This document shows positions 97 through 23,200 of a DNA stretch of 64,000 nucleotides, one piece after another. Below the pieces are notes generated by a model, which saw nothing but the letters and a program-made list of their open reading frames with translations, had not been told where the DNA came from and ran no database searches. The position numbers and the translations under genes were made by a program. Origin of the DNA: Botryllus schlosseri (Eukaryota); the NCBI GenBank assembly GCA_051294905.1, contig CM119376.1:15748001-15812000 (forward strand). The letters run 5' to 3'. The stretch's first letter is position 1; the number at the start of each line of letters is the position of its first letter.

Positions 97-3000
97 ATGA
101 ATCAAGGACATAAACGGCTATCGAGCACGGTGCCAGCTACTCCCTTATCTATCACTTCAAACACATCGGATAACACAATCACATCTTCTGAAATAGGAGT
201 CAACACATTCACATTTCCGGATCCTGACATTTTGAACGTTACCGGTGTGCACGCAAGTAACGAAACCGATCATAATTTGGATTATTCTGATTTCAATTTT
301 GTTGGTAAGTTCTTACGACGGGTGTAGCGCTATCAGCACTAATCAATGGATCAATCGAAGGATAAAATTTTCTAAGCCCCAAGTGAAGCCCTAAATGTTG
401 GGATACACCATAGAGTCGTGATGACATTTTGTCACCGGATATGTTGCATGATATTTCTTTTCAAGCGTGGGTTGCGCCTAAGCCATGAAATCCATTCAGC
501 TCGAATTGTCGCAAGTCCAAAGTTAGCTGAATTTCAAAGGAAACAAGTCGCATTGCGCTTTCGACATGCAGATGGGAAACCGGTATACAATATTATACTC
601 CCTACTAGGGATGGTGTGAACGTGAGGTTCACGTTCGTGTTCTGTGTGTGAACCTCGGAAAATTTGAGGTTCGCGTTCACAACAGAACCTTGGTAGGTTC
701 CGCACTGTGAACCTTTTCATATATTGCAATTTTCACACTTCATTATAACATCTTCGGTTCAAATTTATTGACTTTCAACTGCGGGCCACTCTATGCATGG
801 GGCTGGTAGCATAAACGTTCAACACTAAACGAGCATGCCCTTGACAATCTCAAAAATTTACTTGTATTGTTACAAAAGTCTGCTCGAAATATCCAGCCTT
901 CCGTTTGTACATATTTAGTGTCTCTGTGCTGTGAGCTTGACCCACAATCACAAGACATCAAGAGCGAAATATACACTGTATTTTGTCAGCAAATGATCCT
1001 TATTCAACCAAACAATGAGATTGATATCGTCTTCTGATGTAAAAATGTAGCAGGCGTACGGGGTCAATCTTGACTACATATGTATAGTCCAAATCCGTGC
1101 GACTGGGGTGTTGGCTATACTGCTGTATAACTTGTTAATCGGTAGCAAGTATAGAAACCCATTTTACACTCTGCTCAATATCCATGTGGCAATACTCAGA
1201 CGCTGAATACATTGTCCGATCAGGTCGAAATTGTTGGCAAAGCGACGCAAGATACTGATTTTATGGGATTATTATATCATTTGATTGCCCCAGTTGATAC
1301 ATTTGGCGACGTTTCAAACGTCAATATGTACTTAAGTACTGAGCTATTACGTGGCCCCGAGTCGTCGCTCGGTATCGTGTACCGTAGATTAATATAGGCA
1401 ATCACCTAATTGAAATATGGGGTTTAAATTAGCAATATGACGTCACGTGACGTCATGAAGTTCACGTTCGTGTTCACACAGAACCTTTCAAAAAGGTTCA
1501 CGTTCACACGAACCTGAACCTTTCAGAGGTTCACACCATCCCTACTCCCTACAATGGTTATGATATATGTGATTGCTAACTGCCTCATATGTAGCGTAGC
1601 ATACGATATTGAATTATAAATTTTGAATTCTGAATTATAGTATATGTAGATTAAGGCTGAAAGTGAATCTTCACGCAACGCGGATCCCAATCGCAGCTAT
1701 ACTCTTTTTTTTTATTCAAGACTTCCCATTTCAGATTGGTTCGTTTACACGGCGCTGGCGCTTGGCTGTTTCATCGCGTTTCTCGGATTCTTTGCGAACA
1801 CCATCACTATCATCGCGTACAACAGAAGCAGGAAATTGAGAACCACCTTCAACTTTCTTATCATCAATTTATGCACTGTAGATCTGATCTTTTCCTTACT
1901 GGTAAGTAAATTTCAAACGATCGATATTTCAACTCTATTCAACGAGCGAAAGCTACAAAGATGCTAGCTAAGGGAAATAACCATTTGGAAATTGTGTGCT
2001 AAATTTTCGAGGGATACTCAGCGTTTTAAGTCAGCGAGAAATATCCTACTTGAGATACATGTCATTGGTTGCCTATTTACAAAAACAATATGAACGCAGA
2101 CATGCCTTTGTCATCCAGGTCATCCCTAAAAACCTCATGATCCACACTCGACAAATGATAAGTACGGATGTATTTTATTAAGGTTATACCACCGCATCTG
2201 TTTGTTATGGCTTTACCATCATCCATATTCGGACAAGTAGGTTGCGTTCTACTGAGATATTCTGTCTATGTTTCGATATCTTCGTCCGCAATCAACCTTG
2301 TATGCATCGCAATGAATCGATACGTCGGGATCGTTCATTCCAAACTGTGAGTTGATACTTTCACCACTTGATGCCTCTATGGTTGCATTTTTTTTAAATG
2401 GTGTTTTAAAACACTTTATTTAAAATATGTTTTTGATATAATTATGCTATAATCGTGTAAATACTTCCGAAAAAAAAACATGTAGTATACGGACGATTTG
2501 CACCCGATATAGTCGACGTATACGATTTGGAATGGTTGGAACCCTCGAAATCTTCGTCGGTTCAACACTTACAGCACGTAGATAAATATATATCATTGGT
2601 TGGTAGCCTACGGAACGGGTGTTCTGATGATAATGACCACCGACCGTAAAAAAGCTGCATAACGATGTAGCCCTCGTTAAAGATATTTTCGGTCCGTTTA
2701 TGAGAAGGTCGGAAGCCTTTTTCGTTAAAGGGGTCATATCTACCCTATATTTTGAATTGTCAATGTCAATCAAATGTGACGTCACGATTAAAGATTCATG
2801 ACATCATCGCTATAAAAAACACAGTAAAATCATGTTTTAAACATGAGACGCGTTTTAAACATGCTTGTTTTAAATTGATTTTTGTTTCAAATGCAACCCT
2901 ATTGATGCATCAATTGTATGCTGAATACTTTTTCGAGTATATTTGCGTTAATTACAGCTATCTATACAAATTTTCAACAGATACCGCAAGATGTTTGCAA

Positions 3001-6000
3001 AGGGATACAGGAAATTTTGGATTATAGGAGTATGGCTCATTTCCCCTCTTGTATATCTACCGCTTCCGATCGGTAAGTATAAAACAGAATACAAGTATTG
3101 ATTTCTGTAATGAATGAAAGACTCGGTTGTACTCTAGTTTTCCTGGACGATTTTTCGCTTAAATCACAGGAGTCAAATTTACATGCAATTGCTCGCTGCT
3201 TGAATTTCACAGCCAATATATTTCTTAATTTTTACTCGCGTCGGTTTGTGATGCTTCCGAGTGAATCGCAGAATACTCTCAAAAACACAGTCATATATAT
3301 ATGCAGATGTTTACATCAATGAGGCATTGACGATACAATCACAGGCATCTCAAAGATATACCGATGAAATCAAAGATTATTTATTTTCTTCGTGCCCAGA
3401 CACAATTAAAATTTAAATGATTGGCCTGGTTCAGAGGTTTTCTTTCATCAATATTTCAATACCACGAGGAGACTTTTCTGGCGTGGCAAACGCGCGGACA
3501 AAGAGTGAGACAAAACGCGACAAAGCGAGCGACGGAAGTGAAGCGGGAAGACTCATCAGTCAGGTTACATCCTGACTTTGACAGTTTGCATTGCTTGCGG
3601 CCTCTTGAAATAAGGTTTACATTTCCTTGTCGGCCCATTATATGCGACGGACGGGTGTCAGCGTATAAGTCAGTGTAGAGTTCGCTATAAATAAATAATG
3701 CTGTTACCTAACATGTCATATGGATAATGGATATATATGGAGCCATGGTCCAGCTCTTTTTGTTATACTAATCATTGGCTATGTCATTCATGCTACTATG
3801 CGCGAATAGAGCAATTGCAGCGTCTTACGGGAGCAAATGCAAGGAAAACAATAAGTGGTATAGATTATACCTAATACAATACTTTTATTTCGGGGGAGAT
3901 GAAAATATTCCTCCCAAGATAAAACAATACTTCGGGCATAAATTATCCATGTGGAGGTGACACGAAGGAGTTGGGCCAAAATTGTCGTAATGAATTTAAA
4001 GACACATTTCGAGGGTGTTAGCGAAACATGCTTTCTGTCAAGCTCACGGGCCGCGGTTCAATATACTTTCGGCCCGATCATTATCGTATTACACATGATG
4101 TAGGCCGATATCGCTTCCAATTTTGCCAATGAGGTAATATAATGTACATCCGTAGAACGTACTGATGTTGAGAAAAAATAGTCTCTCTGGTGAAGAAGTA
4201 TAGGTAGGGTTGCATTTGAAACAAAAATCAATTTAAAACAAACATGTTTGAAATATGTTTCTTATTTTTTTAAGCAATGGCGTCACGGATATTAAATTAA
4301 TCATATTAAATTGTGACGTCATAGTGGATTGATAGATGGACATTGACAATTGATAATATAGGGTAAATATAGGCTTCTTTGCCCAAATATCTACGCACTA
4401 TAGCTGTTGAACCGACTATTATTGAGGGATCCAACCATCCCATATCGTATACGTCGGCTATCTCGGGTGGTAATTGTCCGTAGGCTGATACAACATGATT
4501 TTTGGAAAGTATTTACACAATTATGGCATGATTTTACAACTTAATAAAAACAATTTTTTAAAGGCCTTTGTTTTAAATACTGTTTTAAACGAAGTGTTTT
4601 AAACAACTATTTGTTTCGAATGCAACCCTAAGTATAGGCGTGCTTGTGAAGCGTTGTATATCTATAGATAACTAACCTACGCAGGTTAGTTATCGATGGC
4701 GTATCTGTCCGAGCAGAGGTATGGGACGGCATCGTCCCATGCAGACTTAACGCAAAATTCACGATAGCCGTAACTAATTGCTTTATCTTTTGAAATCTGG
4801 CGTCGGTACTAGTGTACGGCACGTGGATTTTGCGTCACGTGTCTTCGCAGTGACGTATTTGACGCCAAAATCTTATCTTCTTGCAGTGAAGTCAATTCGA
4901 AGGACAGCGTCGATAAATCGTTGCGACATGTTTTCGCCTGCAAGCGACCAATACTTGCGTGTCTACCTTGCTGTTCTTATCGGACTCCTGCAAGTCTTAC
5001 CGTTGGTTGTACTGACGGCATTTTATCGGTGAGCCGCGAAAATTTGTTTGATATCAATAATTTTGATATTGTCGACTAAATTGTCGGTTCAAATCTATCT
5101 CACGATCGCATTTTGCATTATCGACCGTTACATGCCGATACTCATTAATCTTTGATATATGATTGGAGTATACTTCCATAGTAAGAAGGGCTCCGAGGAC
5201 CTTATTCGATTGCGCGAAATATTCCCTAACTCCAGGAATTTGTACTTTCTTGTAGGGCGATGATTTTTGACATGTCAAAATAAGTCATAATTTTGTCAAA
5301 ATTGTAGGGTTAGGTCAAAAAATTGTCAAATTTTTTTGCAACCTGCATTTCGTTTTATTGTAGATGTTTGCACTGTCGGTGACCTTATAATTTGACATTC
5401 TACAGCATGGATAAAGAATTACAAAATGATCTCTGGCCCCCAAATCTTCAGCCGATGAGAGCAGATCTTTTGCTGGCTCAACACTTTGATACAAGCTCTA
5501 CTATGAATATCCAGCAATTAAACGTTTATGAACGTTCAAAGTTTGTTGCTCGGACGTGTCATCGGTCCCCACCCGGTGGGTCGGTATAAACACGACCTGG
5601 GGACCTATGAGAAATACGCTCAAAAACTTAAATGTTCCAACTTTTCTTGCTGTGTAATATAATCTAAGCTACAGCAAGCCGAAAAAGGATGTTTGGTCGC
5701 AACCGTCGATAAAATAGAATAAATAAAACCTTAAATGTTGTCATTAAATCACGTTTCCATTTAAGCACAAACTTACAAATTCGCGGGTACATACACATTG
5801 CCCGTAAATCGAGATTTTGACTTCCGAATAGCTCATTGGAGCGATAAAACATCGCAGGTATTTATCAAATACAGCGTCTGAGTGTAGGCGTGTTTCTGTT
5901 GTTGCATGACTAGTTGTCCAACTATTTTGTTTGATTTGGCTATAGAACGTTTACATTCTATAATTTGGCTATGGTATCATTGGCCTGAACTAGGATTACC

Positions 6001-9000
6001 ATATTTTTGAATCGGGAAAGGAGGACACTTGTCAAAATTTTCCAACTTTGGCCCTGTGTTTCACCAGAATTCTAAAAAAAGAGGACAAAATCTCAGAACG
6101 GAGGACATGTAGGCGTCCTCGGAGGACATTTTCAAAAACCGGAAAAAGGAGGAGAAATCCTCCTAAAGGAGGACGTATGGTAACCCTACCTAAACCGTAG
6201 AAATTATGTATTTGAATTGAAAAAATTCCACCCAAGGATGGTACTGAATGAAAAATATGTGCCGTTATATAGCCTGGTGTAAGCCCTACAGTCCGACACT
6301 TCACATTAGAAGTTATTGCTGGTTTGTTCGTGTTGAAGTTTACCAAGAAAAATGGATGCGTTGATCGAAATTTATTTTACACGCCCCAAAACAGAAAACA
6401 TCTGTCAAAGACCCCATTACTCATGAAGATGGAAGCTTTTGCACGCGAAGAAAGATTGTGCCAGCATGCAATTGTAGACAAATTCACGGAGTGCAATCAT
6501 GGGATTATCATGGATCATTTTTCAAGTATTTTCGGTCCCAGTGTCTCATCGCATCTACTCGGATAAATGACCTTTTTTAGTAAATTCACCAGCGATCAGA
6601 GTTAATTGAGTATTTTCCCGTATATATATATATGTCTTCTTTATCGAATCTGTAAATATTGGGGGGGGGGGGCGAAAATTTGTGTCGAGCTTGATATGGG
6701 GGCGATGAGTCGAAAAAGGTTGAGAACCACTGTTCTACAGCTTGTAGGCTTACCGTTGTATAAGTCCCATTGTCAGCTTATTGTGAATCATAAACGGTCA
6801 AATGAAAAAAATAGGTGAGATGGTGGTACGCTCAACTGAAGCAAGGCTGCGTGGGCATTGGTTCTTATATCAAGAAGCACATGATGGAAAATTTTGATGT
6901 AGACAACATTGTCAGAATGTAGCAACACTGTTTGTCACCAGCAGTGTACGCACAACTTCAGTGATGCCAGCCAACAACTGGTGCTTTTGAACGTTCTTTC
7001 TATATATTCTTGGGCAGCTACCTAGTAAGGACAGACACTTTCTACCCGAGAATATAGGAAAGTATCTTTCGTTGTACTGCAACAAATTTTATTCATTTCT
7101 TCCAAAATGCGTGATGTAACTACTGGAATTCTTCATAGGTGCAGATTTCGTTAAAATGAAGTTTTTTCATGTAGAAATTTGCCAGTTTAAAGTCAAAAAA
7201 GTTTTTCAGGCCAAACTACTTCGTGAGGTCATGCAGCTCCAACCAGAAATGGATAAAGTAGTACAATTCTAACATTATGCGCGAAAACACCTCATTTGGT
7301 AACGTGAGGTCGAAATGTTGTCAAAATTAAGTTTATTAAAGTCAAAAATGTCAAAATTTTGATTTTTAAGTTCAAAATCTTCTGTTGTTCAGGTAAAAAA
7401 AAATCGCCTCACTTATAACAGTACCTAGTGGTGATTTACATCTCTATTATTGTGTAGTAATGTTCTTTTCTCAACTTACGATTGTGTATGCGATAACCCC
7501 CGTGATCCTCGTTTCATTTTATTTAGGTCCTATACATAGGTGATATATTTCACAAAACAACGTAGACGAGACACGATAATAGTCAGTATGTATCAAGACT
7601 AAGTCACAAATGTAAATATATAAATTGCATTTCATCTTTTGGGGAATTTGTCTTTTGATGAAACGTAACTATTTGAAGGATTTAAGCCGACTGCTTGGAA
7701 TAGAAACAAGTTTATCCAATACAAGAACAGTGAAGGGATGCCAGGACTTTGGTGTAACCTTTACCGACCCCCACTTGGTAGTGATAATGTGAAAACGACG
7801 TTACCTCCGGAAAGTGAGGTTATGTACCCTTTGTTTTTATTTTAAAGATTGTTCTGCATCTTCAAATCATCGTTGTCAAAATTACATTAATAATAACAAG
7901 ACCTCTATCTCTAATAGAAGTACAGCGACGATCGATACTCTTATACTTTGAGCTCCAATTCTATGTATAATAGGCAGAAATGCATATAGCTGAAAGCTTT
8001 GTGTTCATTAATATTTAATACACGATGCTCTTAAAAACTCGCGGTTTATGGTGCTAACCAACATATTCTCCAAATACAAAGGGGGACCCTAATTTGGGTG
8101 ATTATAGTGTATTATCCAATGTCATACTTAATGGAGGTAGCTCCGATCGTAAGCATTCTGACACGAAAACTGGAGTAGGAGACTCCGCCTGTACTGTTGG
8201 GCAATACCCGCATGCAGACTCAAGAGTTGACGAAGCATCACAACATAAGTGTCGCATTGCAAAAGAATCTGCGTTTTAAGGGCGGGTGGTACCTTTTCTA
8301 ACTACGCGATGTAGGCCTAGGCCAAGCGAGCGCGCAGATTTGTCATAATTCATTTCCAATACCGTATTTGCAATGCATAGTCCTCCGTACCTTTGTGTAT
8401 ACGTAAACCTTACAAATGGCAATGAAGCATAATAGGATCCTATTTTCGAATATCGAAGGATTCGAATCTGTATTCGTTAAAAATAAATTTAAGAAACACA
8501 CACTAATGCACATCAGACGAATGTGATGAATATTTGATGAGCATATTCGAGGTAGGTGCACTAGACCATGATATATATACAGTTCGGAAATTATTTCATG
8601 ATGTCAGCCGCAAGAACCAAACATGCCAGGCGATTTGGAGAGATAACTTAAATATATGGAACAAATATGTTATATATGATATGCATGGAAAGATCCATAA
8701 CCACTCAAATGCATTATTGACTTTTGCGTGTGTACAAAATCCTTTATAATCGCATTATGCATGTCTGTGCAATGTTTACCAACACATATTTTAAGCTTTT
8801 ACTGTTTATATACCCTATTCATATATGCATAATATATAATGGATTTATTACAATGCATATATTGCAATAGAAAGTCACTTCCTAAGGAAGCAGATATGAT
8901 ATTTGGTACCAGTTTTCGAGTAATAGCAATATTCAATCATTTTAAAGTTATTACTTGAAGCGGGGCCTACTATAGTATCGTAGGCCCCGCTTGAAGCAAT

Positions 9001-12000
9001 TAATGTGGTATTACCCGGTTTAAATTGACACGTGAATCGCATGACAATGGATTCGCTCAAACTAGACCAACTTCGCCGTTATGAAATTACAATTCGAAAT
9101 CCCCGGTCATGCGTCTATTATTTGAACTATTTCTGATCTACGCCCAAGTCTGAGTTAGCTAGATACTTAATGGTGTCGTACTGGAGAGATATCTACACCA
9201 TTCGGTGTGTTTCAAGTCATTACATTATGATGAGATTGATTTTATTTTCTCAGTGCCATTTTAGCTAAGGTGAAGAAATGCAGGAAAACGGTGGAGCACC
9301 ATCCATTAACGAATACTCCCACGTGTTACGGGTCCTACTTGGGGAACTCTTGTGCAATGAAGAGCACGAATAGTCCCGAAAACAGCCCGGGACTAGTGAA
9401 GGCCCCTACAACCAGGTTCTCATTCCGACGGGGATCGTCGAAGAGATCCGACGACGAAGTCGCATGCGAAAAAAGTGATGAAATTAATGAGGGCAGAAAG
9501 GCGATAATAATGGCCTATTTGGAAGTACCATCGGCATCAATATCACCAAGGAAAAATCCGGGGGCTTTGTATAAGCGATGTAAGTATGTATAACACAATG
9601 TGATTTCAGTATCCCAACACAATTACGCATATATTCATCTTATGCTCGCATCATATGCAAATCTATCACAAGTCGATTGTTTAATCACTTGTTAAAATCT
9701 CTCTCTGGACAAAGTGACCATGAATGCATGTCCTCGTGAGATGCCAATAGGACAAAGTCGAAAACTAACTTTCTTCATCTGATCTCATTTCCACCGTCTT
9801 ATCGATGCTTATTCAGTCGCTTCCACGAAAAAGTAATTTATTCCTTTTTAAATTGCTTAAAAAGAAGTGTGAACTCATTTCATCCAGTCTGTATTAGACA
9901 CGCTTCGCAGAAATTTGTTATCGACCGAAATGTAATAACGCAAATCAATTCTCGTCACACGTCTTGTCGCGCGGAGCAAAACGCTTGTGCCTTGATGCAG
10001 CATCCTAAGGCGCACGAAAATCGAACCGAGGTGCGATATATTCAATGAAAACGCGATGTTCATATTTCAGCCCCGCCCCAGACTAGAACGATGATTGTGG
10101 GACGAGACAGCGAGGAGAAAAATCAGGTTTTAATATCCGGTACGACATCCTCTCCAAATCTGTTAGACAAATCTGAGGAAGAATCTTACGCCAACAGCAC
10201 CAGGAGCAGATCCACATTACTCTGGTGCAGACAAAGATCGTTTAGTACGGGAGGTATTTATCTCAATTCCTTGATGCAATAGGCCAGGGGTCGGGAACTT
10301 TTTTCGACCGAAGAGCCATATTGACCCAATCTTTCCAATTGTAACCCCTAAAGAGCAATACATGTCAATCAACAGTTACGTCACAATTGAAAATTTGTGA
10401 CGTATTGGTAGCACTAATATATGGGATTGATAGTGTGCACCATATTTGTCTGCCCACATGCGTAGGTGGAGCCAAACATGGTCACTACAGCCGTACACAC
10501 CCACTGCAGGATGTGATACGTCAGTGACGTGGGGTTAGGGGAGGCAAGTGAGGTAGTGCCTCACACGTCGTCAGGGATGAGCGAGGGAAAATTGTGAGAC
10601 CTTCAATGATGATATTTTTATCGATGTTTATGAATGATTAGATTTTAAACATTTCTATTCCCACAATCACGGAATTTTCATATTTATTGTTCGAAAATAA
10701 AGCGCAAAGGGAGAGTTAAGGCACAGTTGAGGCCAGGGCTTTGGAGCCGGAGCCGGAGCCCGGAGCCGGAGCCCCGGAGCCGTGCATTTTCACCGGAGCT
10801 GGAGTCGGAGCCGGAGCTCTTCATAAAATTTAGCCGGAGCCGGAGCTGGAGCCCGTTATTTGAGGAGTAGCTCCGGCTCCGACATATTTCATAAGATGCT
10901 ATTATATATGCAACAACCACATCTGCTGATTTATCATAATTGAACACCAGGCCTGAATTTTAATGCAATGCACACTTGCACAGCAATGGCACGGAGTAAA
11001 TTGCGTTCTAGTGCAACTATGGTGTTGTCGACAATTGACAAGTATTCAGTATGAAGTCACAAGCCGGCACGGTGGCACCTATATGTATTTGTTGCTACAT
11101 CGGATGTTACTGACGGCTGAGGACTCTAGATTACTATGGATAACTAACCTATTAGTAGATTAGTAATCTATATAGACCAGGAATGGCCAACCTTTCTGCT
11201 AAAGGGGCACATGCAATTGACGAATTGACGAGTGCGCGGTTCACTAGCCACGCCAAGCGGGTAAAATTTTCTAAGTTTATAAATAAACTAGGTGAGTATT
11301 GCTGGTCTATTGTATACCACCCGCGAGGCTCAGTTTGCAAGGACACGACTATTCGGCGTCTGGACACATCGATATCGAAGGTCTCCGATAATATGCGACA
11401 CTCATTTTGTGCCTGTACATTTCACCGTCGACGATTTTTATGCGAGCTCAAACGCGAAAAGACTTTCTTCCGTAATTGCGAATAGACTCAATCGGGCAAA
11501 TTAGGCGTTTTTTTTCATTTTCAGTAGGGAGTAGGCTACCAAGCAAGAAATCGTGTGACAATTAAACACGCGAAGCGTGAAGAAAAATTTCGCTACTATT
11601 TTAGATTATTGTAATGTACGACGATTTACTGAAAATGTGACTGGACCCTGGATCTGCCAATGCGTCGGAACTGATATTTTAGTCATCAACATCCCAAGTG
11701 TCGCAGCCAGAATTGTAATTTTTGGTTGGCATTGGAAGTTCACAATCCGAGCAATTCATTTTCCATAATATAATAGGACATTACCTCGCGGGCCACGCAA
11801 AACCCTCTCGCGGGCCACATTTGCGGGCCACCCCTGATATAGATAGCACCATTCTATAATTTCAGAGTCGGAGCCGGAGCTGGAGCCGGAGAAGTGGTTA
11901 TAATGCGGCTCCGGAGCTGGAGCCGGAGCTAATGTATGATAAAAGACAGCTCCGGAGCCGGAGCTGGAGCAGTTTAAATTTACGGCTGCTCCAAAGCCCT

Positions 12001-15000
12001 GGTTGAGGCACAAACGGGCGAAGCCTCACCTGGTATAGTGCAACTCATCGTAAATACCTTAGAATTTATCATCACTGATATTATTCGAATGAAATTTTGG
12101 ACTTCTAAACTATTCGACGTAACATAACATACCTACATTTTAGGGCGGTTCTAGAAAGCTACTTACGTTACCAATCAATAACCTGAATAGCTATGGCGTT
12201 GTTTTTAATTTGAATTTGTAATTGTTAATGTCACTTACAAGGAAGTTATTTATCGGCGTAGATCAGGAAGACAATGTGGATTTGAAAACTGCATTGTCCT
12301 ACAAGCGTCAGCATGTCAATGTATCAATTAGGGTATCGTGCAATCCAACATTTCGAGGCGCACGATGGCGGGCAGATCGAATTCGTCAGTGGTGCTAGTG
12401 GCCGGCGCGACAGCAAATTTGTGGATTTCGAAAAGGGGGTACGAATCCCTAACCCTGGGTACACCACTGTCTCGACCTCTCAAAGGCATGTTTATTCTGC
12501 CACGAGAATAATTATTCCGGCCGTCGTGAAAATTTACTAAAATATTGCTGCAATGTCGATAAAATTAAGTACAAAATTAAAAATTTGTCAAAGAGCCAAG
12601 TATGGCTCACGAGCCATAGGTTCCCGACCACTGCAATAGGGGAATGAATGTGTGTCGAATGGTATCCGCGTTTATGTCGATTGTTCACATCGTCCTTATA
12701 GATACAGTAATAACATATCAATGATATCATCGTCTTCGAACGTTTTTAGTCGACAATCCGTTACCATAATTAAGCTATAGAGTAAGACATTAGATTAGAC
12801 AATGGCAACTAATTCCCATTCCTACGGTTCGAAATATTAATCCATTGTGAATGTACTGCAAAATTCCCTTGCCGCCCAAATGGGATTGATTTTTAAAACA
12901 TGAAAACCAAGATGGCGGTAATAAGCACGTCATAACAATACAAATTGGATTGCATCCCCTTCATTATGCGTCTTGACTCGGATCATGCCGGTTAATTTCA
13001 CCAATTATGAGATTTATGTTGGTATTTTAGACGAAGAAATCGAGCCGGAACGGGGAATGGTCGGCGATAACGAGACTGATTTAAAGCAACAAACCTCCTT
13101 CACTCTAACGACAGGTGGATCAATTCAATCCTTAAACGACGAGTCACCCCAACAAAAGAAACAATCAGCAAACGCGAACGAAAAACGCCGTCCTATATTA
13201 GGAGGCAGGAAATTGCTCAACAGTCGGTCGGCCGACAATGAGCCTCTCATGCACGGGGTGCAGTATGAAGGGACAAATAACACAAGATTAAGCACCGATA
13301 GCCGAACTAAAGTCAACTCATTAACTTCAAACTCATTCCCCTCAAAATTGAACTCCAAATACAGCCTTTCCGGTAAATACCTCAGGATCCCGCACCCGAG
13401 CACAGATTCCATTGACGCGCTCGGACGGAATGAAGTCACCATTGGAGTAAATAGAAGACGCGTTCGGGCATTGACAAGACAAACTCTCGTGAATGAAGAA
13501 GATTTATTTACATGTATTACGGCGATAGATAGTTCGAAAAATGCATTGCCCACACAGAATGAAATTAACCATCACACCTCTCGCGAAGGACAAAGTTCAG
13601 AGGAGGGAAAACGTACGGAAAAAGAAACGCCCCAGGAAAAATCGTTCAATGGCGTTCAATCCACGAAAAAAGTAACGGACAGCCCAAAGATCCGGACTGA
13701 AAGCCACGGTTTGAATCTTTCTCCAAGTTTGAGTTATGTAGCGAGGGCAGAGCATTTCAACAAACCCAACATCGGCAATGATACCTATACCGACGACGAA
13801 CCGCAATCCACTTCGAAAAGGTTCATGTACCGTCGCGGAGGCAGCGACCGAACCGGCGCACGGTGGCTGGGTCGTTTTCGGAAAAGCAAAAATTGGTCGG
13901 TCACAAGTATGATACCTCCGAAGCTCAAGAACCGCAGCAACTCGCAATGCCAACAGAACAATGTCATAAAAATTGTGATTGATCACGCCACAGAGGAAAT
14001 GAGTGAGACCTGGCTGGGCGAGGAATTTGATGAAGCGGGAAGAATAGAAAAAGACGCACCGAGCGATGTAAGTAGAAGTTCGACCGAGTTCGAAAGGAAA
14101 AATTTAAGCATCATACCAGAACAATTAACGAACCCCACCGATAACTCGGTGGATAATAAATCGTCTAGTGAATGTGGAATCTCAAAACGGACTGACGATG
14201 CCAAAGCAAGTTCCGGGCTCTGGCGTTCTATATTGAAGGGAAAATGGAAGCTTTTGATTTCTAAATCCCCGCTCAGAAAAGATACGCCTAGAGACGCAGC
14301 TGGCACGAGCAAAAAAGCCGATATACTCGAGAATTCTCGCAGTACCATTACTGAAAAAGGAGACAATGGTTCAGCGAAAGAAATAGGGAAACATACCAAA
14401 CACCAGCAGCCATGTTTTACCCCCGAATTATGGTCCAACATAGTGGAAGGCACCAGTACGAACAGACCAGTCGTTATGCTGCCGATGCCCAGCATTCCAA
14501 TGAGCCCCTCGCCCAGTGTCACCAAATTCGACCCTCCCGACAGTAAGGCAAAGCAAGGGTTCTCTTTGAATATTCACAACATGGACAGCGGCGCTACCCC
14601 AGAGGAACAATCGGACTGCGACGACTCGGCCCGCACTTCGAGCAACTGCGCGCATCGCGACAGCGATTTGTCGTCCCGCGAAGACGCCGACCTGCTGCGC
14701 AAGCGTCGAGAGATGAACGCCTCGACGCAGTTCCTGCGTGCCAAAAATGTGCCGGGAAAATTCGACGACAACCAATCCATGCTGGACTTGAACAGCGTTG
14801 ACCTCGGGCGCCGATGGTCAATGCAGAGCGACGCGCTCTCCATTTACAGCGAGCGCATTGCCAGGCCGATAGAGAGGTCTCACTCGAACTGCAGTCGCTA
14901 CTCGCAAAAGCGGGCTTCGAGAAGGAGCAACAGCTCCGACAATCAAAGCGGCAGGAGATCTTTCCGCAGACACTGGTCTTCCAAGAAATCGTCCGTCGTT

Positions 15001-15414
15001 TCATCCGCGGGCAGTAGTTTCAGGCGGAAACGGCGCCGCATAGCGGAAAGAAAGCTAGCGTACAGCGGAATATCGATATGCATTGCGTTCGCTTTGTGCA
15101 TGCTGCCGACCTCTGCAGTCGATATAATGCGGAAATTGACGACCGTTCATATTCCACCCGAGATCGAATTCAGTCTGATGGTGCTGTCTTGGGCACACGT
15201 CGTTACAAATCCGTTTTTGTATGGGTTTCTGAATTCCCAGTTTCGTAAAGAGTACAAGCGGATAGGCCGAGATTTCGTGAACTTCGTAACAAGGAAGAAT
15301 CGGAGACGTGGCCTGTTGTCCGGGCGGTCTGCTATAATACAAACGATGCGGGAGCAGATCCAAGATCAGGACTCCGTCAATCAACCTCAGTCAAAAAGAC
15401 CGCGAAAAGAATAG
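97..15414 (+). CDS. Class A (rhodopsin-like) GPCR, GPR84/Tre1/Moody-like, with giant ICL3; 8 exons, ~1221-1233 aa
   Basis: Exons 97-304, 1735-1901, 2183-2346, 2981-3072, 4887(or 4851)-5028, 9254-9579, 10071-10253, 13031-15414. All are GT-AG with matching phases (1,0,2,1,2,1,1). N-terminus has NTS/NVT/NET sequons. TM1-2 FANTITIIAYNRSRKLRTTFNFLIINLCTVDL resembles GPR84 KLRTRFNLLIANLTLADL. TM3 IAMNRYVGIVH (DRY variant), TM4 IIGVWLISP, TM5 LQVLPLVVLTAFY, TM6 FALCMLP, TM7 LSWAHVVTNPFLYGFLNSQFR (NPxxY). Family assignment is from recalled sequence similarity, not a search. Confidence 0.9.
606..1544. mobile_element. Non-autonomous hAT element (TAGGG termini)
   Basis: TIR tagggatggtgtgaac / gttcacaccatcccta; perfect 8-bp TSD ctccctac (598-605, 1545-1552); subterminal gtgaac/gttcac repeats. 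Confidence 0.9.
2378..2901. mobile_element. hAT MITE, TAGGGTTGCATT family, long subtype
   Basis: Ends tatggttgcattt / aaatgcaacccta; homologous to copies at 4205, 22427, 61445 and 63102; flanks ttgatgcctc / ttgatgcatc. Confidence 0.85.
4205..4630. mobile_element. hAT MITE, TAGGGTTGCATT family, short subtype
   Basis: TIR tagggttgcatt / aatgcaacccta; perfect 8-bp TSD agtatagg. Confidence 0.9.
5406..6732. mobile_element. Buster/Charlie-type hAT insertion nested in 5253-7411
   Basis: Right TIR ggttgagaaccactg; perfect TSD ttctacag (5398-5405, 6733-6740). The right end resembles 30310-30383; the left TIR is degenerate. The empty site is visible near 47117. Confidence 0.8.
5991..6188. mobile_element. 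hAT-like MITE with ggaggaca subterminal repeats
   Basis: TIR taggattaccat / atggtaacccta; flanks cctgaac / cctaaac (7 bp, 6/7 match). Confidence 0.75.
8961..8989. mobile_element. 29-bp palindromic micro-insertion (CGGGGCCTAC family)
   Basis: cggggcctactatagtatcgtaggccccg flanked by a perfect 7-bp direct repeat, cttgaag. Confidence 0.75.
10734..12001. mobile_element. Non-autonomous hAT element with GGAGCC subterminal arrays
   Basis: TIR cagggctttggagc / gctccaaagccctg; perfect 8-bp TSD gttgaggc; (ggagcc)n arrays at both ends. Confidence 0.9.
11178..11836. mobile_element. Buster-type hAT MITE nested in 10734-12001
   Basis: Ends caggaatggcc / ggccacccctg; TSD atatagac / atatagat (7/8, central TA). 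Confidence 0.75.
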
Positions 15415-17279: not shown

Positions 17280-20200
17280 CTATAAAAAATATGAAGTAAC
17301 CTGTTCAGCTTCTTTGACCTTTCCCAGCTCGGAAAGCACAATGCCGCTGTTCAAGTAAGCTACGGCGAGCGTCTTCCGAAACCGAATGGCCAAGCGATAC
17401 CTATTGAGAGCTTCGTGATATCGGTTCTGTTCTTGATAGAGCAATCCCCTGAAACAGGGAATGGCGATTACACCCCTTCTTGCAAGACGTAGCACACTGT
17501 TATTCGCGCTCGCCGCCGCGGATAGATACCGATGATGGTGCTGCTTCCACTAGCGCACCCTTACTGGCAGCAAGAATTGGCCTCTACGCCAGATCGTATG
17601 TCAATGCATATAAAGTCTAGCCAGGTAGAACGAAGGTAGTATCAATGCAGACGACCAGAATTTTATGGGCATATATAGTAGCATTTATAGTCAGCAATGG
17701 GAACGATGCTAGTATAGCGGGAACCAGAGCGGGGCTGGATATCCGGCCTGATTTTTTCCAATTTTATCCCGATCCGGATCGAACCCGGATTCATATTATA
17801 TCTGATTTTGCCGGAGTCGGATCGGGGTAGCATTCGTACGTTTCGTATACCGTGAGATTCGTTATTAAGGCTGTTGATTAGAATCACTGCTGTAACTACC
17901 TACCGAACACCAGTAACCAATACAAACCTGTAGGTTTTCCATTGTCATGGTTCTTTTGTTTCAGTATTCAATATACAACCTGAACCCGTACCGTTGCCGT
18001 ATGATCTATTCCAATTGCTTTTGTAGTTTACTAGAAACAGGTACACGTGCATAGGGCTGGGCAAAATCGAGTGCCTGAGTGATTCGATTCTGAATATACT
18101 CTGTCTCGTATGTTGCGACACGGACAATCAAGGTTTCAAGGCTTCATCAGTGGAAAATAGTATCAAAGCTATTTAATCCTCGTTAGTAAAATTACTTTCA
18201 GTTGCGAGGAGCGTATAATTTCAGTACTCGAAAAAACGTATTTTACTACTCGACTCGAATCATTGTGCCCAGCACTACTCATGTATGATTTTGATTATTA
18301 TTGAAGTTTTCCGGATGATATATCGGTCATTTTAAGAATCCGGCCTAGGAGTTGGACCAGAGAATTTGTCGATGCGCCCTGCACTAGTTCATCATTGATG
18401 ATTTATGTCGACAGGTGGCGCTAAAGAGTCTAGTAACCCAAGTGGATGTACGCTCGATCTCTCTAAATCTGAAGTCATGAAGCAATAGATAAATGTAGCC
18501 AAGCGACGGGAAGATACTTAGATCACAAAATTGGCTCTATAACCCATCACTGCCTATCGGATAGTAGCAATTGTATGTATGTCGATCGAAAGCTATAATC
18601 TGCTTTGGTATCGTACCTTTTAATGTTGACTCACATCGATTAATATGCATGCATTGCATATTGTATATTTCTGCAGGAACGAATAGGTCAGTATAGGTCG
18701 GTCTATCTTATGTATTAATGTTTTGCTCCCACGATAAATGTGATTTGTCATAAAAGCAATTTTCTTAGGAGTCTATTTCATCTCTTTCCGTTATTACGAA
18801 CAACTCCAAGTCTGTTTGATTTTCCAGTTATACAGGGGAGGGTTTGTTTCCATTGCAAACATAAAAATCTTCTATTTAGCTTGTAATTTATCTTTGGAGA
18901 AAACCATAATCACGCGCGAGCGACGAAAAGGCTACGCAACGTGCGCGCATGGCTACCCAGCTGCAAAAGACCCAAAACAAGTTTTGAATGGGTCACATCG
19001 GAGAATAAGCGGAATGTTTTCCGGCCGAGGAGCTGAATGTTTACGCCGCTTTACAGTCGGTTGAGTCGATGATTCGACAACTCATGTGGGGCTTTCTGAG
19101 TTAACCCCTTCCTCGCAAATATTTCGGAAACCGCACCTTCAATTGATCTGAGCTGTCCGGCAAGAGTTAAAGTAACTGCGAATTTGGTTAAGGTTAGCTG
19201 ATTCAGTTAAGAATAGGAGATTCCGCAGCTACGTGTTTGACAACATACATTCTGATCAATCTGTGGCACGGACCTGTAACTTAATTTTATCGCTAACGTG
19301 TTCTGTTTTAAGCGACAGCAGCTGATGAATGATAAAATATTCTTCGGCAGTAAAACTGCGAGACAAATGATTCACGAGTGCGCCAAAGAAAAAAACTTAA
19401 TTCACCGTGTTGGTACATGTGTCCAATAATCCGAAACTAACCGATGGATATATATTTATATAGTTATACGGACGCAGGACGCAGCTGCTTCTCAAGGAAC
19501 AAAAATTCATGCTATGTTTTCGCTATTAGAAGGCACGTGGTGGAGAGCTCCGTTAGTCTCTTAAAAATTGAACTAAATGATGAAATTGTTTATTGAGTTT
19601 AGAGCGTGATCCGTTTAAAAATAAACGGCACCCGTTACCGAAAGCGAAACGCGCAGTCACACGCGTTGCACCCCGACCTTATCTACAAATCTGCGCCGAT
19701 GGTAATATATTTGGCTACACAATGCTACAACCATCCTATAATGAACCAATGTGTGGAAACATACTTCTATAAGCGCGAGTGAAGAATCAATTGGAGTCGT
19801 GATATCTTTTGCATAACATTTCAAAACAATAAGGGTGAATCCAATCGGTGACGAAATTGAGTCATATCCTGGATAAAAGCAAAACCGAAAGATAGCATCA
19901 CTGTCTACTTACTCTACTTAATTATATCAGGTGTATGCTGAACGGACGAAAGATTATTCACGTTAAAAGTGGAAGACAAAATTAATTTGAGCCTTGCCGT
20001 ATAGTGGAAATTGATTATGATATTTTAGTGTTTGAAATTAATGTTTGCTATATTCAATAATTATTACGAATTAAACCACGTGAGGGATTTCCAGTGCTCG
20101 TAATTGGTTATATTTCTCAAGTCGCGCCTCCGACGATGTTGTGCATCTGGTGTTTATACTTTATGATCTGTCCCTCGTGATATTCATGGTTGTGTATACA

Positions 20201-23200
20201 AAGGGACAACGCCATAGTGATACCAAATGTTGCGGTATTGATATTAAATATTTCATCAATTTTAATGCCATTGATATGGCTTCCAAAGTCTGCAGGAAGA
20301 TTTTGACAATAGTCCGAAATCAAATTTTTATACAGATGGAACTTACTAAAATGGAAAAATATCGTTAATGATGGAAATTCACCGAGTATACAATGACGGG
20401 TATATAATTATTGTAGTCATTTCGCATTGACCGGATTATATTCATCTCTACATCCTCCCTAACGACATTACCTTGCATAAATGCCTTCGTCGTGTTAAAC
20501 GCTAAGCAAGAATATTCTGAATAGCAGTGTTCACAAAGTCTTCGATCTGATCAGGACCCGGTTTTCTCGATCCAAAACTGGCTATCAGCTATCGAATATG
20601 GGTCATACGGGTTGTTTCGTATGTCAAGCAAAGGTAATTCGAACTGCGTTTCTCTGTCACTGAGGTGTGTTACACGGGGGGTACATCTATACACGTGACA
20701 TATCCGAATTCCAAGTAAACGAAATTTTCTTTAGGAAAAACAGTCGATTACCGTATTCCTTCAATATCAATAGTTAGTATATTTCGTCAGAGTAGGTAAC
20801 ATCAATAACCTATAGCGAGATTGGATTCCGTCCGATATTTACGATTCAATGCGATGATGATCGAATTCTAAAATGTCCCTCGGTATATATGAATAGTTTC
20901 GTTTGCTTTGTATACTAACCATGCGCATTGGATCGAATGGATTTTTAATGTTAGTTATCGCATATATATTGGGCGACGACAACTTCATGACATATTTACT
21001 GCTGTTGAATAAAACAGCAAAGCTTTCCTGTCGCCAAATAAATATACCTGTCCAAAATACCGGGGGTGGGATTAAACAAGTATGTGGGCGGTATAGATAT
21101 TAATGGAGTCATTTCAGCATCTCTACTCCTTGTTAATCATTTGTTGAAAGGCGTAAATCGGCCAGTACTTTGGATTTTTTTCACTCACAGATTGTAATGG
21201 ACGTCGGCCATATTTCCGCGCGCTGCCAGCGCATTGAGATAGCAACCTTCCGCGTCTTTAATCCTACCGGATTCTTTCATCACGTTCCCGAGATTAGACC
21301 AGGATTTAGCGGGCGACGTTGAAATGCCCGACCTGAAAAGGGGATTAATACTGAGTGTGCGCCACTTTGGTGAATTTGCTCGACACGGTTTCCATACTGC
21401 AGTACAAACAAAGGCATGGGGCGCTTTATAATGGATATATTACTAAGCAAAATAATGAAAGCGCGAGACTTGAAAATACATCCTGTATCGGAGGTTTTGG
21501 CTGATTTCAAATTGGGTCTTGGAATTTTATAATATGATTATTATCGGACGACTTCATTCACACAAACTCCCATTCTGCAGCATCGTTTGATTTCACGCGT
21601 CCTTCTCAGATTATTTTCCGCCTCGTTGTCGCACGGCTATCTTTCTCTCTGCACGCTATAAACGTAAAAATTGTGTAATCTACCGATTTTCACCCCGCCG
21701 CAAGATGCAAATAAAGTCATCAGCACCGGTACAATATGTTGCTTTCACATCCGTTCCATGCAATTGGCGCAATAGTAAAAACATGGTGCACGTAAGCATA
21801 GCCCACCGCACTCACCCCTGGCATATATCTCCGTAAGGGTTGGTGTCCTAGAAATAGCCGATAGTCTGATTCACACCTTACGCTAAGGAGGTAATATGGT
21901 GAATACACCTATTCTCCACCCATGCATTTACATTGCGTGGCTTTTATACGCAATCCGCAGTCACAACTAGTCCAGCGATGAGGGAAGACCTGACTCAGGT
22001 CTACAAGGCCTAAGTTATTGTACGCCACTTCATATATAGCTGCTAGTCTTCTACAGTTGGCAGTCAGAATAGTGTATGAGCCTGCTTTACGTATTAATTG
22101 AGCGATTGACAATACAATGGAATGATGATAACTTGCGAACGCACCGGTACAAATGATATTGGTCTTGCCAGTCGAGGTTCCGATGAGTAGTGCGTATCGC
22201 AAGCAGCATCAATGCAATGATTTGCAGCCAGAAGCTGACTCGTGAGATGCTGAAATAAAGATTTATGTGTGGTTATCGAGAAAAGATGTCAGAGGCATGA
22301 TGGCTTTCTTCTGGCCTGTTCTTGAATATTGCGGATTGGAAATATGTTGTAGATGCCTGATCGGTAGATTACTGGATTGATGTCATATTGTATATCAGGG
22401 ATATCTAAATATATCCCTGTTGTAAATAGGGTTGCATTTAAAGCAAAATTCAATTTGAAACAAACATGGTAGAAACAAGGCCCTTGTTTGCAACATTTTT
22501 TTCAAGCCATGGCGTCACGAATATTCACGTGTGACGTCATAGTAGATTGACATTGACAATTGAAAATAGAGGGTAAATATAGCTCTTTTGGCGAAATATT
22601 TGTACTATTGCTGTTAAATCGACTATTTTGAGGGTTCCAACCATCCCATATCGATTTACGTCGGCTGTATCGCGTGGTAATTGTCCGTACGCTCATACAG
22701 CATGTTTTGTGGAAAGTATTTACCCAATTATGGCATAATTTTACAACTTGAAAAAAAAAATGAAAAGGCCCTTGTTTAAAACACTGTTTAAAACATGTTT
22801 CAAAATGAAGTGTTTTAAAACACCGTTTGTTTTAAATGCAATCCTAGTTGTTAATGGATATAATCTATAAAAATTCAACTACAGGTTGCATCTCTGTAAT
22901 TTAAGGTTTGAATCACATCCGGATCCTCTGAATTTTTCGTCACGGATTGACTGATTGACTGAAGATTGATGAATAAATTGAATATGGATGCATTTACAAC
23001 GTCTGGTTTCAAGTGACCCGTTCATCTATACTCGGTACTCTTCACGCAATGATATAATTCTGATTTTACCTTGGGAATTGCCTTTTCCATCTTTTATTAC
23101 TGAGATGATCCACGCAGAATTGCCATCCGTAAATGACCAGTATGCAAAATCCAGCACTCGGCAAATACAAAATGCGCTCGGCGATGATGAAACCAACGTA

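What the first reader, a model, noticed from the sequence alone, without database searches (positions are those of the whole stretch)
5028..15054. GPR84-like GPCR with an ~840-residue third intracellular loop
Seen: between TM5 (...TAFYR) and TM6 (KLAYSG...) the spliced frame has about 109+61+675 = ~845 open codons over three exons, with no hydrophobic segment. It is rich in S/R/K and ends in an RRxS/RS cluster (RRWSM, KRASRRSNSS, RRSFRR, SFRRKRRR). Established: vertebrate class A ICL3s are usually tens to ~250 aa. Inference: about 70% of this ~1220-aa receptor is one disordered loop that could be a phosphorylation, arrestin or 14-3-3 scaffold, or be proteolytically released.
Basis: partly seen in the sequence, partly recalled or inferred. 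Interest (0 to 1): 0.7.

Follow-up and report, generated by a model that had tools for sequence, protein, structure and literature searches.

The report
Sea-squirt GPCR with giant intracellular loop
This is a real, transcribed sea-squirt (ascidian) receptor gene of the rhodopsin-like GPCR class whose loop between membrane helices 5 and 6 is about 843 residues long, roughly 3.5 times the longest human loop of this kind, and relatives in three ascidian orders have an equally oversized loop.

Summary
An 8-exon gene on the + strand (97..15414, all introns GT-AG) encodes a 1221-aa class A GPCR. TM5 ends at 5028 and TM6 starts near 15055. The 843 residues between them (69% of the protein) contain no hydrophobic segment.

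- **Transcripts:** an RNA-derived contig joins 9579/10071 and 10253/13031 exactly as proposed. Contigs tile exon 8 with no internal splice.
- **Untested junction:** Canonical splice sites and protein continuity in orthologues support it.
- **Orthologues:** the same architecture occurs in Styela clava (loop ~1000 aa), Ciona intestinalis (~680), Clavelina lepadiformis (~740) and a further genomic contig. Both predicted Ciona isoforms keep the loop.
- **Loop properties:** it looks disordered (AlphaFold2 mean pLDDT 38, composition). It carries about ten conserved short islands and three predicted helices, and its polymorphisms suggest purifying selection (pN/pS ~0.24).
- **Distribution:** the exon-8 loop profile matched only three proteins, one from Styela clava and two unnamed. 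The gene is single-copy in this genome.

The "GPR84-like" label is weak. GPR84 is the best solved-structure hit only for the Styela protein; Ciona and family profiles give flat lists.

Arrestin, kinase or 14-3-3 docking is inferred, not shown.

This scan listed the same stretch before (s1-300938).

The parts
97..304 (+). Exon 1: start codon and extracellular N-terminus with three N-x-S/T sites
   Evidence: Model. N-glycosylation motifs at residues 22, 47 and 55. The start aligns with the start of the Styela clava protein.
1735..1901 (+). Exon 2: TM1 and TM2 (NLCTVD, Asp 2.50)
   Evidence: Partial Pfam 7tm_1 match of 20.4 bits. Hydropathy peaks. Colinear with orthologues.
2183..2346 (+). Exon 3: TM3 with an NRY motif in place of DRY
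   Evidence: Pfam 7tm_1 34.6 bits, above the 30.5 cut-off. NRY at residue 170.
2981..3072 (+). Exon 4: ICL2 end and TM4
   Evidence: Model, hydropathy, tblastn colinearity in L003.
4887..5028 (+). Exon 5: ECL2 cysteine and TM5, ending ...TAFY(R)
   Evidence: GT donor at 5029.
9254..9579 (+). Exon 6: first 109 loop codons. Contains the conserved TM5 extension AILAKVKKCRKTVEHH (9255-9302) and the island IMAYLEVPSASIS (9507-9545).
   Evidence: RNA contig X1 record 1 covers 9253-9579 and splices to 10071. Islands.
10071..10253 (+). Exon 7: 61 loop codons. Contains islands TSSPN (10145-10159) and FSTGDEE, which spans the junction to 13038.
   Evidence: Both flanking joints are in one RNA contig. 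Conservation.
13031..15051 (+). Exon 8, loop part: about 673 codons of hydrophilic, probably disordered sequence
   Evidence: Contigs of X1 and X2 tile it without any joint. AF2 pLDDT is below 50 for most of it. It lies on the disordered side of the Uversky plot. It aligns with P0001, P0003 and P0002.
13813..13911 (+). Conserved basic block SKRFMYRRGGSD...FRKSKNWSVTSM, including predicted helix 1 (residues 701-716, 13849-13896, charge +6)
   Evidence: Alignment. Helix. Hydrophobic moment 0.49, above the loop's 95th percentile of 0.46.
13966..13989 (+). Island IKIVIDHA, conserved in all ascidian orthologues
   Evidence: Mean conservation 0.8. I312, I314 and V315 of exon 8 are invariant.
14200..14262 (+). 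Predicted helix 2 (residues 818-838, ...GLWRSILKGKWKLLIS, charge +5)
   Evidence: A similar W/L/K pattern is seen in the orthologues.
14677..14736 (+). Predicted helix 3 (residues 977-996, REDADLLRKRREMNASTQFL), the most confident element inside the loop
   Evidence: Its 10-residue block has mean pLDDT ~69. It overlaps a sub-threshold Pfam VGCC_beta4Aa_N match.
14812..14844 (+). Island RWSMQSDALSI. The preceding R makes it RRWS, a basophilic-kinase (PKA-type) consensus.
   Evidence: R594, S596, S603 and S606 of exon 8 are invariant.
15022..15051 (+). Basic juxtamembrane stretch RRKRRRIAER leading into TM6
   Evidence: Conservation 0.74. Invariant R, A, E columns.
15052..15414 (+). Exon 8, receptor part: TM6 (CMLP), TM7 (NPFLY), helix 8, a 63-residue tail and the stop codon
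   Evidence: Pfam 7tm_1 positions 189-260. Helices in the AF2 model. Motifs and tail composition.

Best explanation
This is a single-copy, transcribed orphan class A (rhodopsin-like) GPCR gene of an ascidian, and the family is conserved across ascidian orders. Its helices TM5 and TM6 are joined by an 843-residue, mostly disordered third intracellular loop encoded by exons 6-8. What is shown: the exon structure, the splicing of exons 6-7-8, an intact 7TM core, conservation of the giant loop in three ascidian orders, and constraint on the loop's coding sequence. What is inferred: the 7TM bundle works as an ordinary ligand-gated switch. The conserved TM5 and TM6 extensions at the two loop ends form the G-protein interface. 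The long loop, rather than the short and phosphosite-poor C-tail, is the regulatory and docking platform. On this reading, the loop's conserved short motifs (RRWS, RQRSFS-TGDEE, SISPRK, a P-x-x-P stretch) and three short helices, two of them basic, are sites for kinases and for arrestin-type or other adaptors. The loop may also gate access to the G-protein pocket, as shown for much shorter ICL3s.
For: Gene model with 7 GT-AG introns and a 1221-aa open frame. RNA contig with joints 9579/10071 and 10253/13031, and exon 8 tiled without joints. Class A hallmarks: Pfam 7tm_1 on exons 2, 3 and 8 and 113 bits on the Styela orthologue; D2.50, NRY, CxxP and NPxxY present. Orthologues with loops of about 1002, 683, 685 and 741 aa, plus colinear exons in genomic contig L003. 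The Ciona isoforms X1 and X2 differ by 20 aa, which maps to an ECL2 insert, and both keep the loop. Loop identity to Styela is 35.6% against 44.9% for the core. Invariant loop columns across 7 sequences. Of 22 listed exon polymorphisms, 12 are synonymous and 10 are not, against a site ratio of 558:1974; pN/pS is ~0.24 and binomial p is 9e-4. Disorder: AF2 mean pLDDT 38, with 658 of 793 residues below 50, and 89% of 60-residue windows on the disordered side of the Uversky plot. The C-tail has 7 S/T and no phosphocode, while the loop has 184 S/T. Receptors with long ICL3s and poor tails recruit arrestin through ICL3 (PMC13105114), and ICL3 autoregulates G-protein access (PMC10033409).
Against: No experiment or tool result here shows phosphorylation, arrestin binding or any partner. 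Phosphocode motifs are not enriched over shuffles (30 observed against 27.6 +/- 6.0). No strict 14-3-3 motif is present. The AF2 alignment had only 7 rows and scored even TM6-7 at only pLDDT 56-70, so low confidence is weak proof of disorder. Junction 5028/9254 was not observed in reads. Two bulk RNA-seq runs sampled at ~6% gave almost no reads on the exons, so expression level, tissue and isoform ratios are unknown. The polymorphism sample is small and consists only of the best-supported differences that the tool listed.
Confidence: 0.6

Rival explanations
1. The long-loop mRNA is a minor or unproductive form, and the working receptor comes from an isoform that skips exons 6-7 or splices inside exon 8 to give a normal-sized loop.
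For: Assembled contigs drop rare variants and the raw RNA runs gave no usable depth, so alternative joints cannot be excluded. Ciona has two annotated isoforms.
Against: No internal joint in exon 8 appears in either contig run. The two Ciona isoforms differ in ECL2, not in the loop. The loop's coding sequence shows an excess of synonymous changes and has conserved islands across three ascidian orders, which is not expected for sequence that is normally spliced out.
Confidence: 0.1
2. The loop contains a folded, functional domain, such as a binding or enzymatic module, rather than being a disordered scaffold.
For: The conserved blocks include hydrophobic residues (IKIVIDHA, PVVMLPMPSIP). About 11% of 60-residue windows fall on the folded side of the Uversky plot. 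The shallow alignment limits AF2.
Against: No Pfam domain passes its cut-off. The exon-8 loop profile found only three proteins, one from Styela clava and two unnamed, among 1.84 billion representatives. AF2 predicts only three isolated helices and no tertiary packing, with pTM 0.21. The alignments are rich in indels between the islands.
Confidence: 0.07
3. It is a functionally split receptor. The loop is cleaved, or the halves are translated separately, so that TM1-5 and TM6-7 associate non-covalently or a loop fragment is released to signal.
For: From my own knowledge, not tested here: muscarinic and adrenergic receptors split in ICL3 can reassemble. Basic clusters (RRKRRR in the loop, KRPRK in the C-tail) resemble nuclear-localisation or dibasic sites.
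Against: The basic cluster next to TM6 is conserved and in the usual position of a G-protein-coupling and positive-inside element. No evidence for cleavage or for separate transcripts was found. One RNA contig links exons 6, 7 and 8.
Confidence: 0.04

Closest known systems
Class A GPCRs with a long ICL3 and a poor C-tail (muscarinic M1-M5, alpha2-adrenergic, D2, H1/H3)
   Same: Both have a rhodopsin-like 7TM core. In both, ICL3 is the largest intracellular element and carries nearly all the S/T residues, while the C-tail is short and lacks phospho-clusters. In those receptors ICL3 recruits arrestin (PMC13105114) and gates G-protein selectivity (PMC10033409).
   Different: The loop here is 843 aa (683-1002 in orthologues), against a stated range of 10-240 aa for class A GPCRs (PMC10033409). 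The exon-8 loop profile matched only three proteins, one from Styela clava and two unnamed. The 7TM core is not specifically aminergic. The ligand is unknown.
GPR84 / Drosophila Tre1 family
   Same: GPR84 is the best solved-structure hit for the Styela orthologue, E 1.9e-19 with both receptor halves matched. TM3 carries NRY as Tre1 does (PMC5584160, PMC3848830). Ciona was reported to have 3 TRE1/GPR84-type receptors (PMC2396169).
   Different: GPR84 is not among the 60 hits listed for the Ciona orthologue or for the TM6-7 profile. For the TM1-5 profile it scores about 8 bits below CCK-A, galanin and beta2 receptors. The GPR84 chains in the PDB are about 400 aa. No phylogeny could be built here.
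NCBI/UniProt predicted proteins LOC120336151 (Styela clava), LOC108951010 (Ciona intestinalis), LOC143473057 (Clavelina lepadiformis)
   Same: They are orthologues with the same TM1-5, giant loop, TM6-7 layout and the same conserved islands.
   Different: All are annotated only as 'uncharacterized protein'. Five full-text searches of the paper library turned up no paper describing them or their loop.

Membership tests
Class A (rhodopsin-like) GPCR, Pfam PF00001 7tm_1 | Profile match over the seven helices | tested here: met
   Window exon 3 scores 34.6 bits (cut-off 30.5). Exons 2 and 8 give partial matches to profile positions 2-35 and 189-260. The Styela orthologue scores 113 bits in two stretches.
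Class A (rhodopsin-like) GPCR, Pfam PF00001 7tm_1 | Microswitch residues: D2.50, (D/E/N)RY, P5.50, CWxP, NPxxY, TM3-ECL2 cysteines | tested here: met
   NLCTVD, NRY, CMLP (W6.48 replaced by M) and NPFLY are found. A cysteine lies before TM3 (GQVGC) and another in ECL2 (NRCDMF).
GPR84/Tre1 family | Closest similarity, or phylogenetic clustering, with GPR84/Tre1 rather than other class A groups | tested here: inconclusive
   GPR84 is the top hit only for the Styela sequence. It is not top for Ciona or for the family profiles. A search for normal-length relatives returned nothing.
GPR84/Tre1 family | NRY variant of the DRY motif, as in Tre1 | tested here: met
   NRY is present in the window protein and in all four full-length orthologues. 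The motif is described for Tre1 in PMC5584160. It is not unique to that family.
Long-ICL3 / tail-poor receptors that use ICL3 for arrestin recruitment | ICL3 holds the phospho-acceptor clusters and the C-tail lacks them | tested here: met
   The loop has 184 S/T and 30 phosphocode matches. The 63-residue tail has 7 S/T and no phosphocode.
Long-ICL3 / tail-poor receptors that use ICL3 for arrestin recruitment | Agonist-dependent loop phosphorylation and arrestin binding | not testable with these tools
   This needs cell assays.

The most novel reading that the evidence does not exclude
The giant loop is an ascidian-specific signalling hub, not just a long tether. Its conserved helices (two of them basic) and its kinase-type motifs would recruit partners such as calmodulin-type or SH3/adaptor proteins. 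The receptor would then act largely as a membrane-anchored scaffold whose conformation at TM5/TM6 controls the exposure of these motifs. That would make it a natural test case for how ICL3 length and content set GPCR output.
Probability: 0.15. Interest if true: 0.7.

Novelty: new variant of a known kind. Interest (0 to 1): 0.45.

Why it matters
ICL3 is now seen as an autoregulatory gate for G-protein selectivity and, in tail-poor receptors, as the arrestin docking site. All studied examples are no longer than about 240 residues. A conserved, constrained loop of 680-1000 residues in an experimentally tractable chordate is a natural extreme for testing those ideas. Ciona has the orthologue LOC108951010, which gives a concrete and currently uncharacterised gene to study. 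The result also warns annotators that a GPCR's TM1-5 and TM6-7 parts can be separated by more than 2.5 kb of coding sequence and 10 kb of genome.

Tried and rejected
- **GPR84 membership.** Single-sequence and profile searches of solved structures give no consistent nearest family, so I do not file the receptor as a GPR84 orthologue.
- **Normal-length relatives.** A word-based search with the TM1-5 piece returned nothing at E<=1e-8. The feature search of the ESM Atlas gave only generic 7tm_1 clusters.
- **VGCC_beta4Aa_N.** This Pfam match in the loop scores 16.3 and 19.7 bits against a cut-off of 25.1. It was not reported for Styela, so I treat it as a chance resemblance of a short acidic/basic helix.
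- **Motif checks.** Strict 14-3-3 mode I/II motifs: none. Phosphocode enrichment: none beyond what composition predicts.
- **Origin of the loop.** A profile search of 1.84 billion representatives found only P0001, P0002 and P0003. A search of the window's own genome found only the gene itself. The profile also missed the Ciona and Clavelina loops, so its reach is short.
- **dN/dS against the closest relative.** The DNA of the P0001 contig was not available. Listed polymorphisms were used instead.
- **Raw RNA-seq runs X23 and X24.** They gave essentially no reads on the exons, so there is no junction count or expression estimate.
- **Repeats in intron 7.** The repeat finder found none, although many divergent RNA contigs pile up there.
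- **Earlier findings.** A word search of the scan's earlier findings returned nothing.
Full report
**Observation.**
I added four upstream exons by eye and by frame. The resulting model has 8 exons: 97-304, 1735-1901, 2183-2346, 2981-3072, 4887-5028, 9254-9579, 10071-10253 and 13031-15414. It runs from an ATG to a stop and encodes 1221 aa. The stretch between ...TAFYR and AER-KLAYSG is residues 259-1101, or 843 aa, which is 69% of the protein. Its highest 19-residue Kyte-Doolittle mean is 0.69, against 1.4-2.5 for the TM helices. It is rich in S (14.7%), R (8.9%) and K (7.4%) and has a net charge of +32. A 674-codon open frame has a chance probability of about 9e-15.

**Transcripts.**
No run is on record as RNA for this stretch, but the contigs validate themselves.

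- In run X1, one 1027-letter contig lies on 9253-9579, 10071-10251 and 13029-13529. This gives joints 9579/10071 (GT..AG) and 10253/13031 (GT..AG after the 2-base shift the tool notes).
- Depth is zero in the unique intron parts 9640-10039 and about 1 or less in 12640-13039.
- X1 and X2 contigs together cover 13029-15239 except about 9 bases, with no joint inside exon 8.
- A 1244-letter X1 contig starts at 14563 and runs off the end of the laid stretch. If colinear, it would take the mRNA to about 15806.
- The X1 contig begins matching at 9253 with 18 earlier letters that do not lie on this stretch. That is what a splice from exon 5 would give, since exon 5 ends in G as does the intron. I could not see those letters.
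- One X2 contig runs unspliced through 9240-9661, which suggests pre-mRNA or DNA.
- Two bulk RNA-seq runs read at about 6% gave almost nothing on the exons, so expression in those samples is low.

Junction 5028/9254 therefore rests on splice signals and on protein continuity in orthologues.

**Relatives.**
Exon 8 finds a 760-aa ORF from an unnamed assembly (P0001, 49% identity over 97% of the query). It also finds Styela clava LOC120336151 (P0002, 1379 aa), which has 7tm_1 at residues 87-268 and TM6 at about 1255. A profile of the exon-8 loop against 1.84 billion representative proteins finds only P0001, P0002 and a third ORF, P0003.

The genomic contig carrying P0003 (L003) holds colinear matches to exons 2, 3, 4, 5 and 6-7 and to the giant last exon within 13 kb. 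A search with the Styela TM1-5 region plus the proximal loop finds Ciona intestinalis LOC108951010 (1030 and 1050 aa) and Clavelina lepadiformis LOC143473057 (1086 aa). Loop lengths are about 1002, 683, 685 and 741 aa.

The two Ciona isoforms differ by 20 aa, which maps to an insert in ECL2, not in the loop. The gene is single-copy in this 495.5-Mb assembly. By NCBI names, the named relatives belong to three different ascidian orders; that ordinal assignment is from my own knowledge. The window's organism is therefore an ascidian. It is closest to the unnamed P0001 source and closer to Styela than to Ciona.

**Constraint.**
Against Styela the loop is 35.6% identical and the core 44.9%. Against Ciona the figures are 23.7% and 36.5%. 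Conservation is concentrated in short islands separated by indel-rich linkers:

- AILAKVKKCRKTVEHH, the TM5 extension
- IMAYLEVPSASIS(PRKNP)
- TSSPN
- (RQRS)FSTGDEE, across the exon 7/8 junction
- the basic block SKRF.YRRG.SD...FRKSKNWSVTS
- IKIVIDHA
- PVVMLPMPS
- ...LL..R.EMN.S.QFLR
- DLGRRWS.QSDA.SIYS
- SKKSS
- RRKRRR.AER before TM6

Of the 22 exon polymorphisms that the reads tool listed, 12 are synonymous and 10 are not, while the loop offers 558 synonymous and 1974 non-synonymous sites. This gives pN/pS of about 0.24 and a binomial p of 9e-4. The sample is small and pre-filtered by the tool.

**Structure.**
AlphaFold2 on exon 8 with a 7-row alignment gives mean pLDDT 38 and pTM 0.21, with 658 of 793 residues below 50. 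Inside the loop it predicts only three isolated helices:

- residues 701-716, RTGARWLGRFRKSKNW, charge +6
- residues 818-838, containing GLWRSILKGKWKLLIS, charge +5
- residues 977-996, REDADLLRKRREMNASTQFL, block mean pLDDT about 69

After these come TM6, TM7 and helix 8. The alignment is shallow: even TM6-7 reach only pLDDT 56-70. Composition agrees with disorder. Mean hydropathy is 0.387 against a boundary of 0.427, 89% of 60-residue windows fall on the disordered side, and 57% of residues are disorder-promoting.

**Family.**
The core is class A: 7tm_1 matches, D2.50, NRY, CMLP, NPFLY and the two conserved cysteines. The GPR84 label is not robust. GPR84 leads only for the Styela sequence (72 bits against 62.5 for H1). 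For Ciona the leaders are beta2, MT1 and OX2 receptors, and GPR84 is not among the 60 hits listed. A TM1-5 profile gives CCK-A, galanin-1 and beta2 receptors at 66-69 bits and GPR84 at about 60. A TM6-7 profile gives somatostatin, orexin and melatonin receptors. The NRY motif is shared with Drosophila Tre1 (PMC5584160, PMC3848830). A Ciona survey counted three TRE1/GPR84-type receptors (PMC2396169), but I could not link this gene to them. I call it an orphan class A receptor, possibly of the Tre1/GPR84 group.

**Mechanism.**
What is shown is an intact receptor core with conserved TM5 and TM6 cytoplasmic extensions, a 63-residue tail with 7 S/T and no arrestin phosphocode, and a loop with 184 S/T. 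By analogy with M2-type receptors that recruit arrestin through ICL3 (PMC13105114), and with ICL3 autoregulation of G-protein access (PMC10033409, which gives 10-240 aa as the class A ICL3 range), I infer that the loop is the phospho-regulated docking and gating element. Candidate sites are RRWS and RRGS (PKA-type), RQRSFS followed by an acidic run, SISPRK (a CDK-type S-P-x-K site, seen in the window, Styela and L003 sequences but not in Ciona), a P-x-x-P stretch and the three short helices. None of this is tested. Phosphocodes are not enriched over shuffles and no strict 14-3-3 site exists.

**Novelty.**
The orthologues are in public databases only as uncharacterised predictions. Five full-text searches found no paper on them. 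Long ICL3s are a known theme. This is an extreme version, conserved across ascidian orders, with no detected relative outside them.

**Earlier findings in this scan.**
The same stretch was listed before (s1-300938).

Noticed in passing
window 17280-17495 (-) and 23066-24013 (-): A TMTC-type O-mannosyltransferase gene lies on the opposite strand just downstream. A TMTC_DUF1736 domain (E 3.9e-25) is at 23066-24013 and a TPR exon at 17280-17495.
   Followed up: partly
window 10254-12640 (intron 7): Hundreds of RNA-run contigs at 90-95% likeness pile up here, with summed depth up to about 2650 at 11640-11839 and many loose ends. This indicates dispersed repeats or transposon fragments that are transcribed elsewhere in the genome. 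The repeat finder saw no internal repeat.
   Followed up: partly
window 9240-9661: A contig of run X2 runs unspliced from before the exon 6 acceptor through the donor at 9579 into the intron, with about 5% differences from the window. It is either pre-mRNA or DNA of a divergent haplotype.
   Followed up: no
window 14641-14745 (exon 8 residues 537-571): A sub-threshold Pfam match to the N-terminal domain of calcium-channel beta4a (VGCC_beta4Aa_N) appears in both the window protein and P0001. It overlaps the best-predicted loop helix. It is probably a compositional resemblance.
   Followed up: partly
P0005/P0008 (Ciona intestinalis LOC108951010): The two annotated Ciona isoforms differ by a ~20-residue insert in extracellular loop 2, just before TM5. 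This could alter ligand access.
   Followed up: no
window 15117-15128 (TM6): The toggle-switch tryptophan of the CWxP motif is replaced by methionine here (CMLP). The orthologues carry leucine at that position (CILP or CVLP).
   Followed up: no
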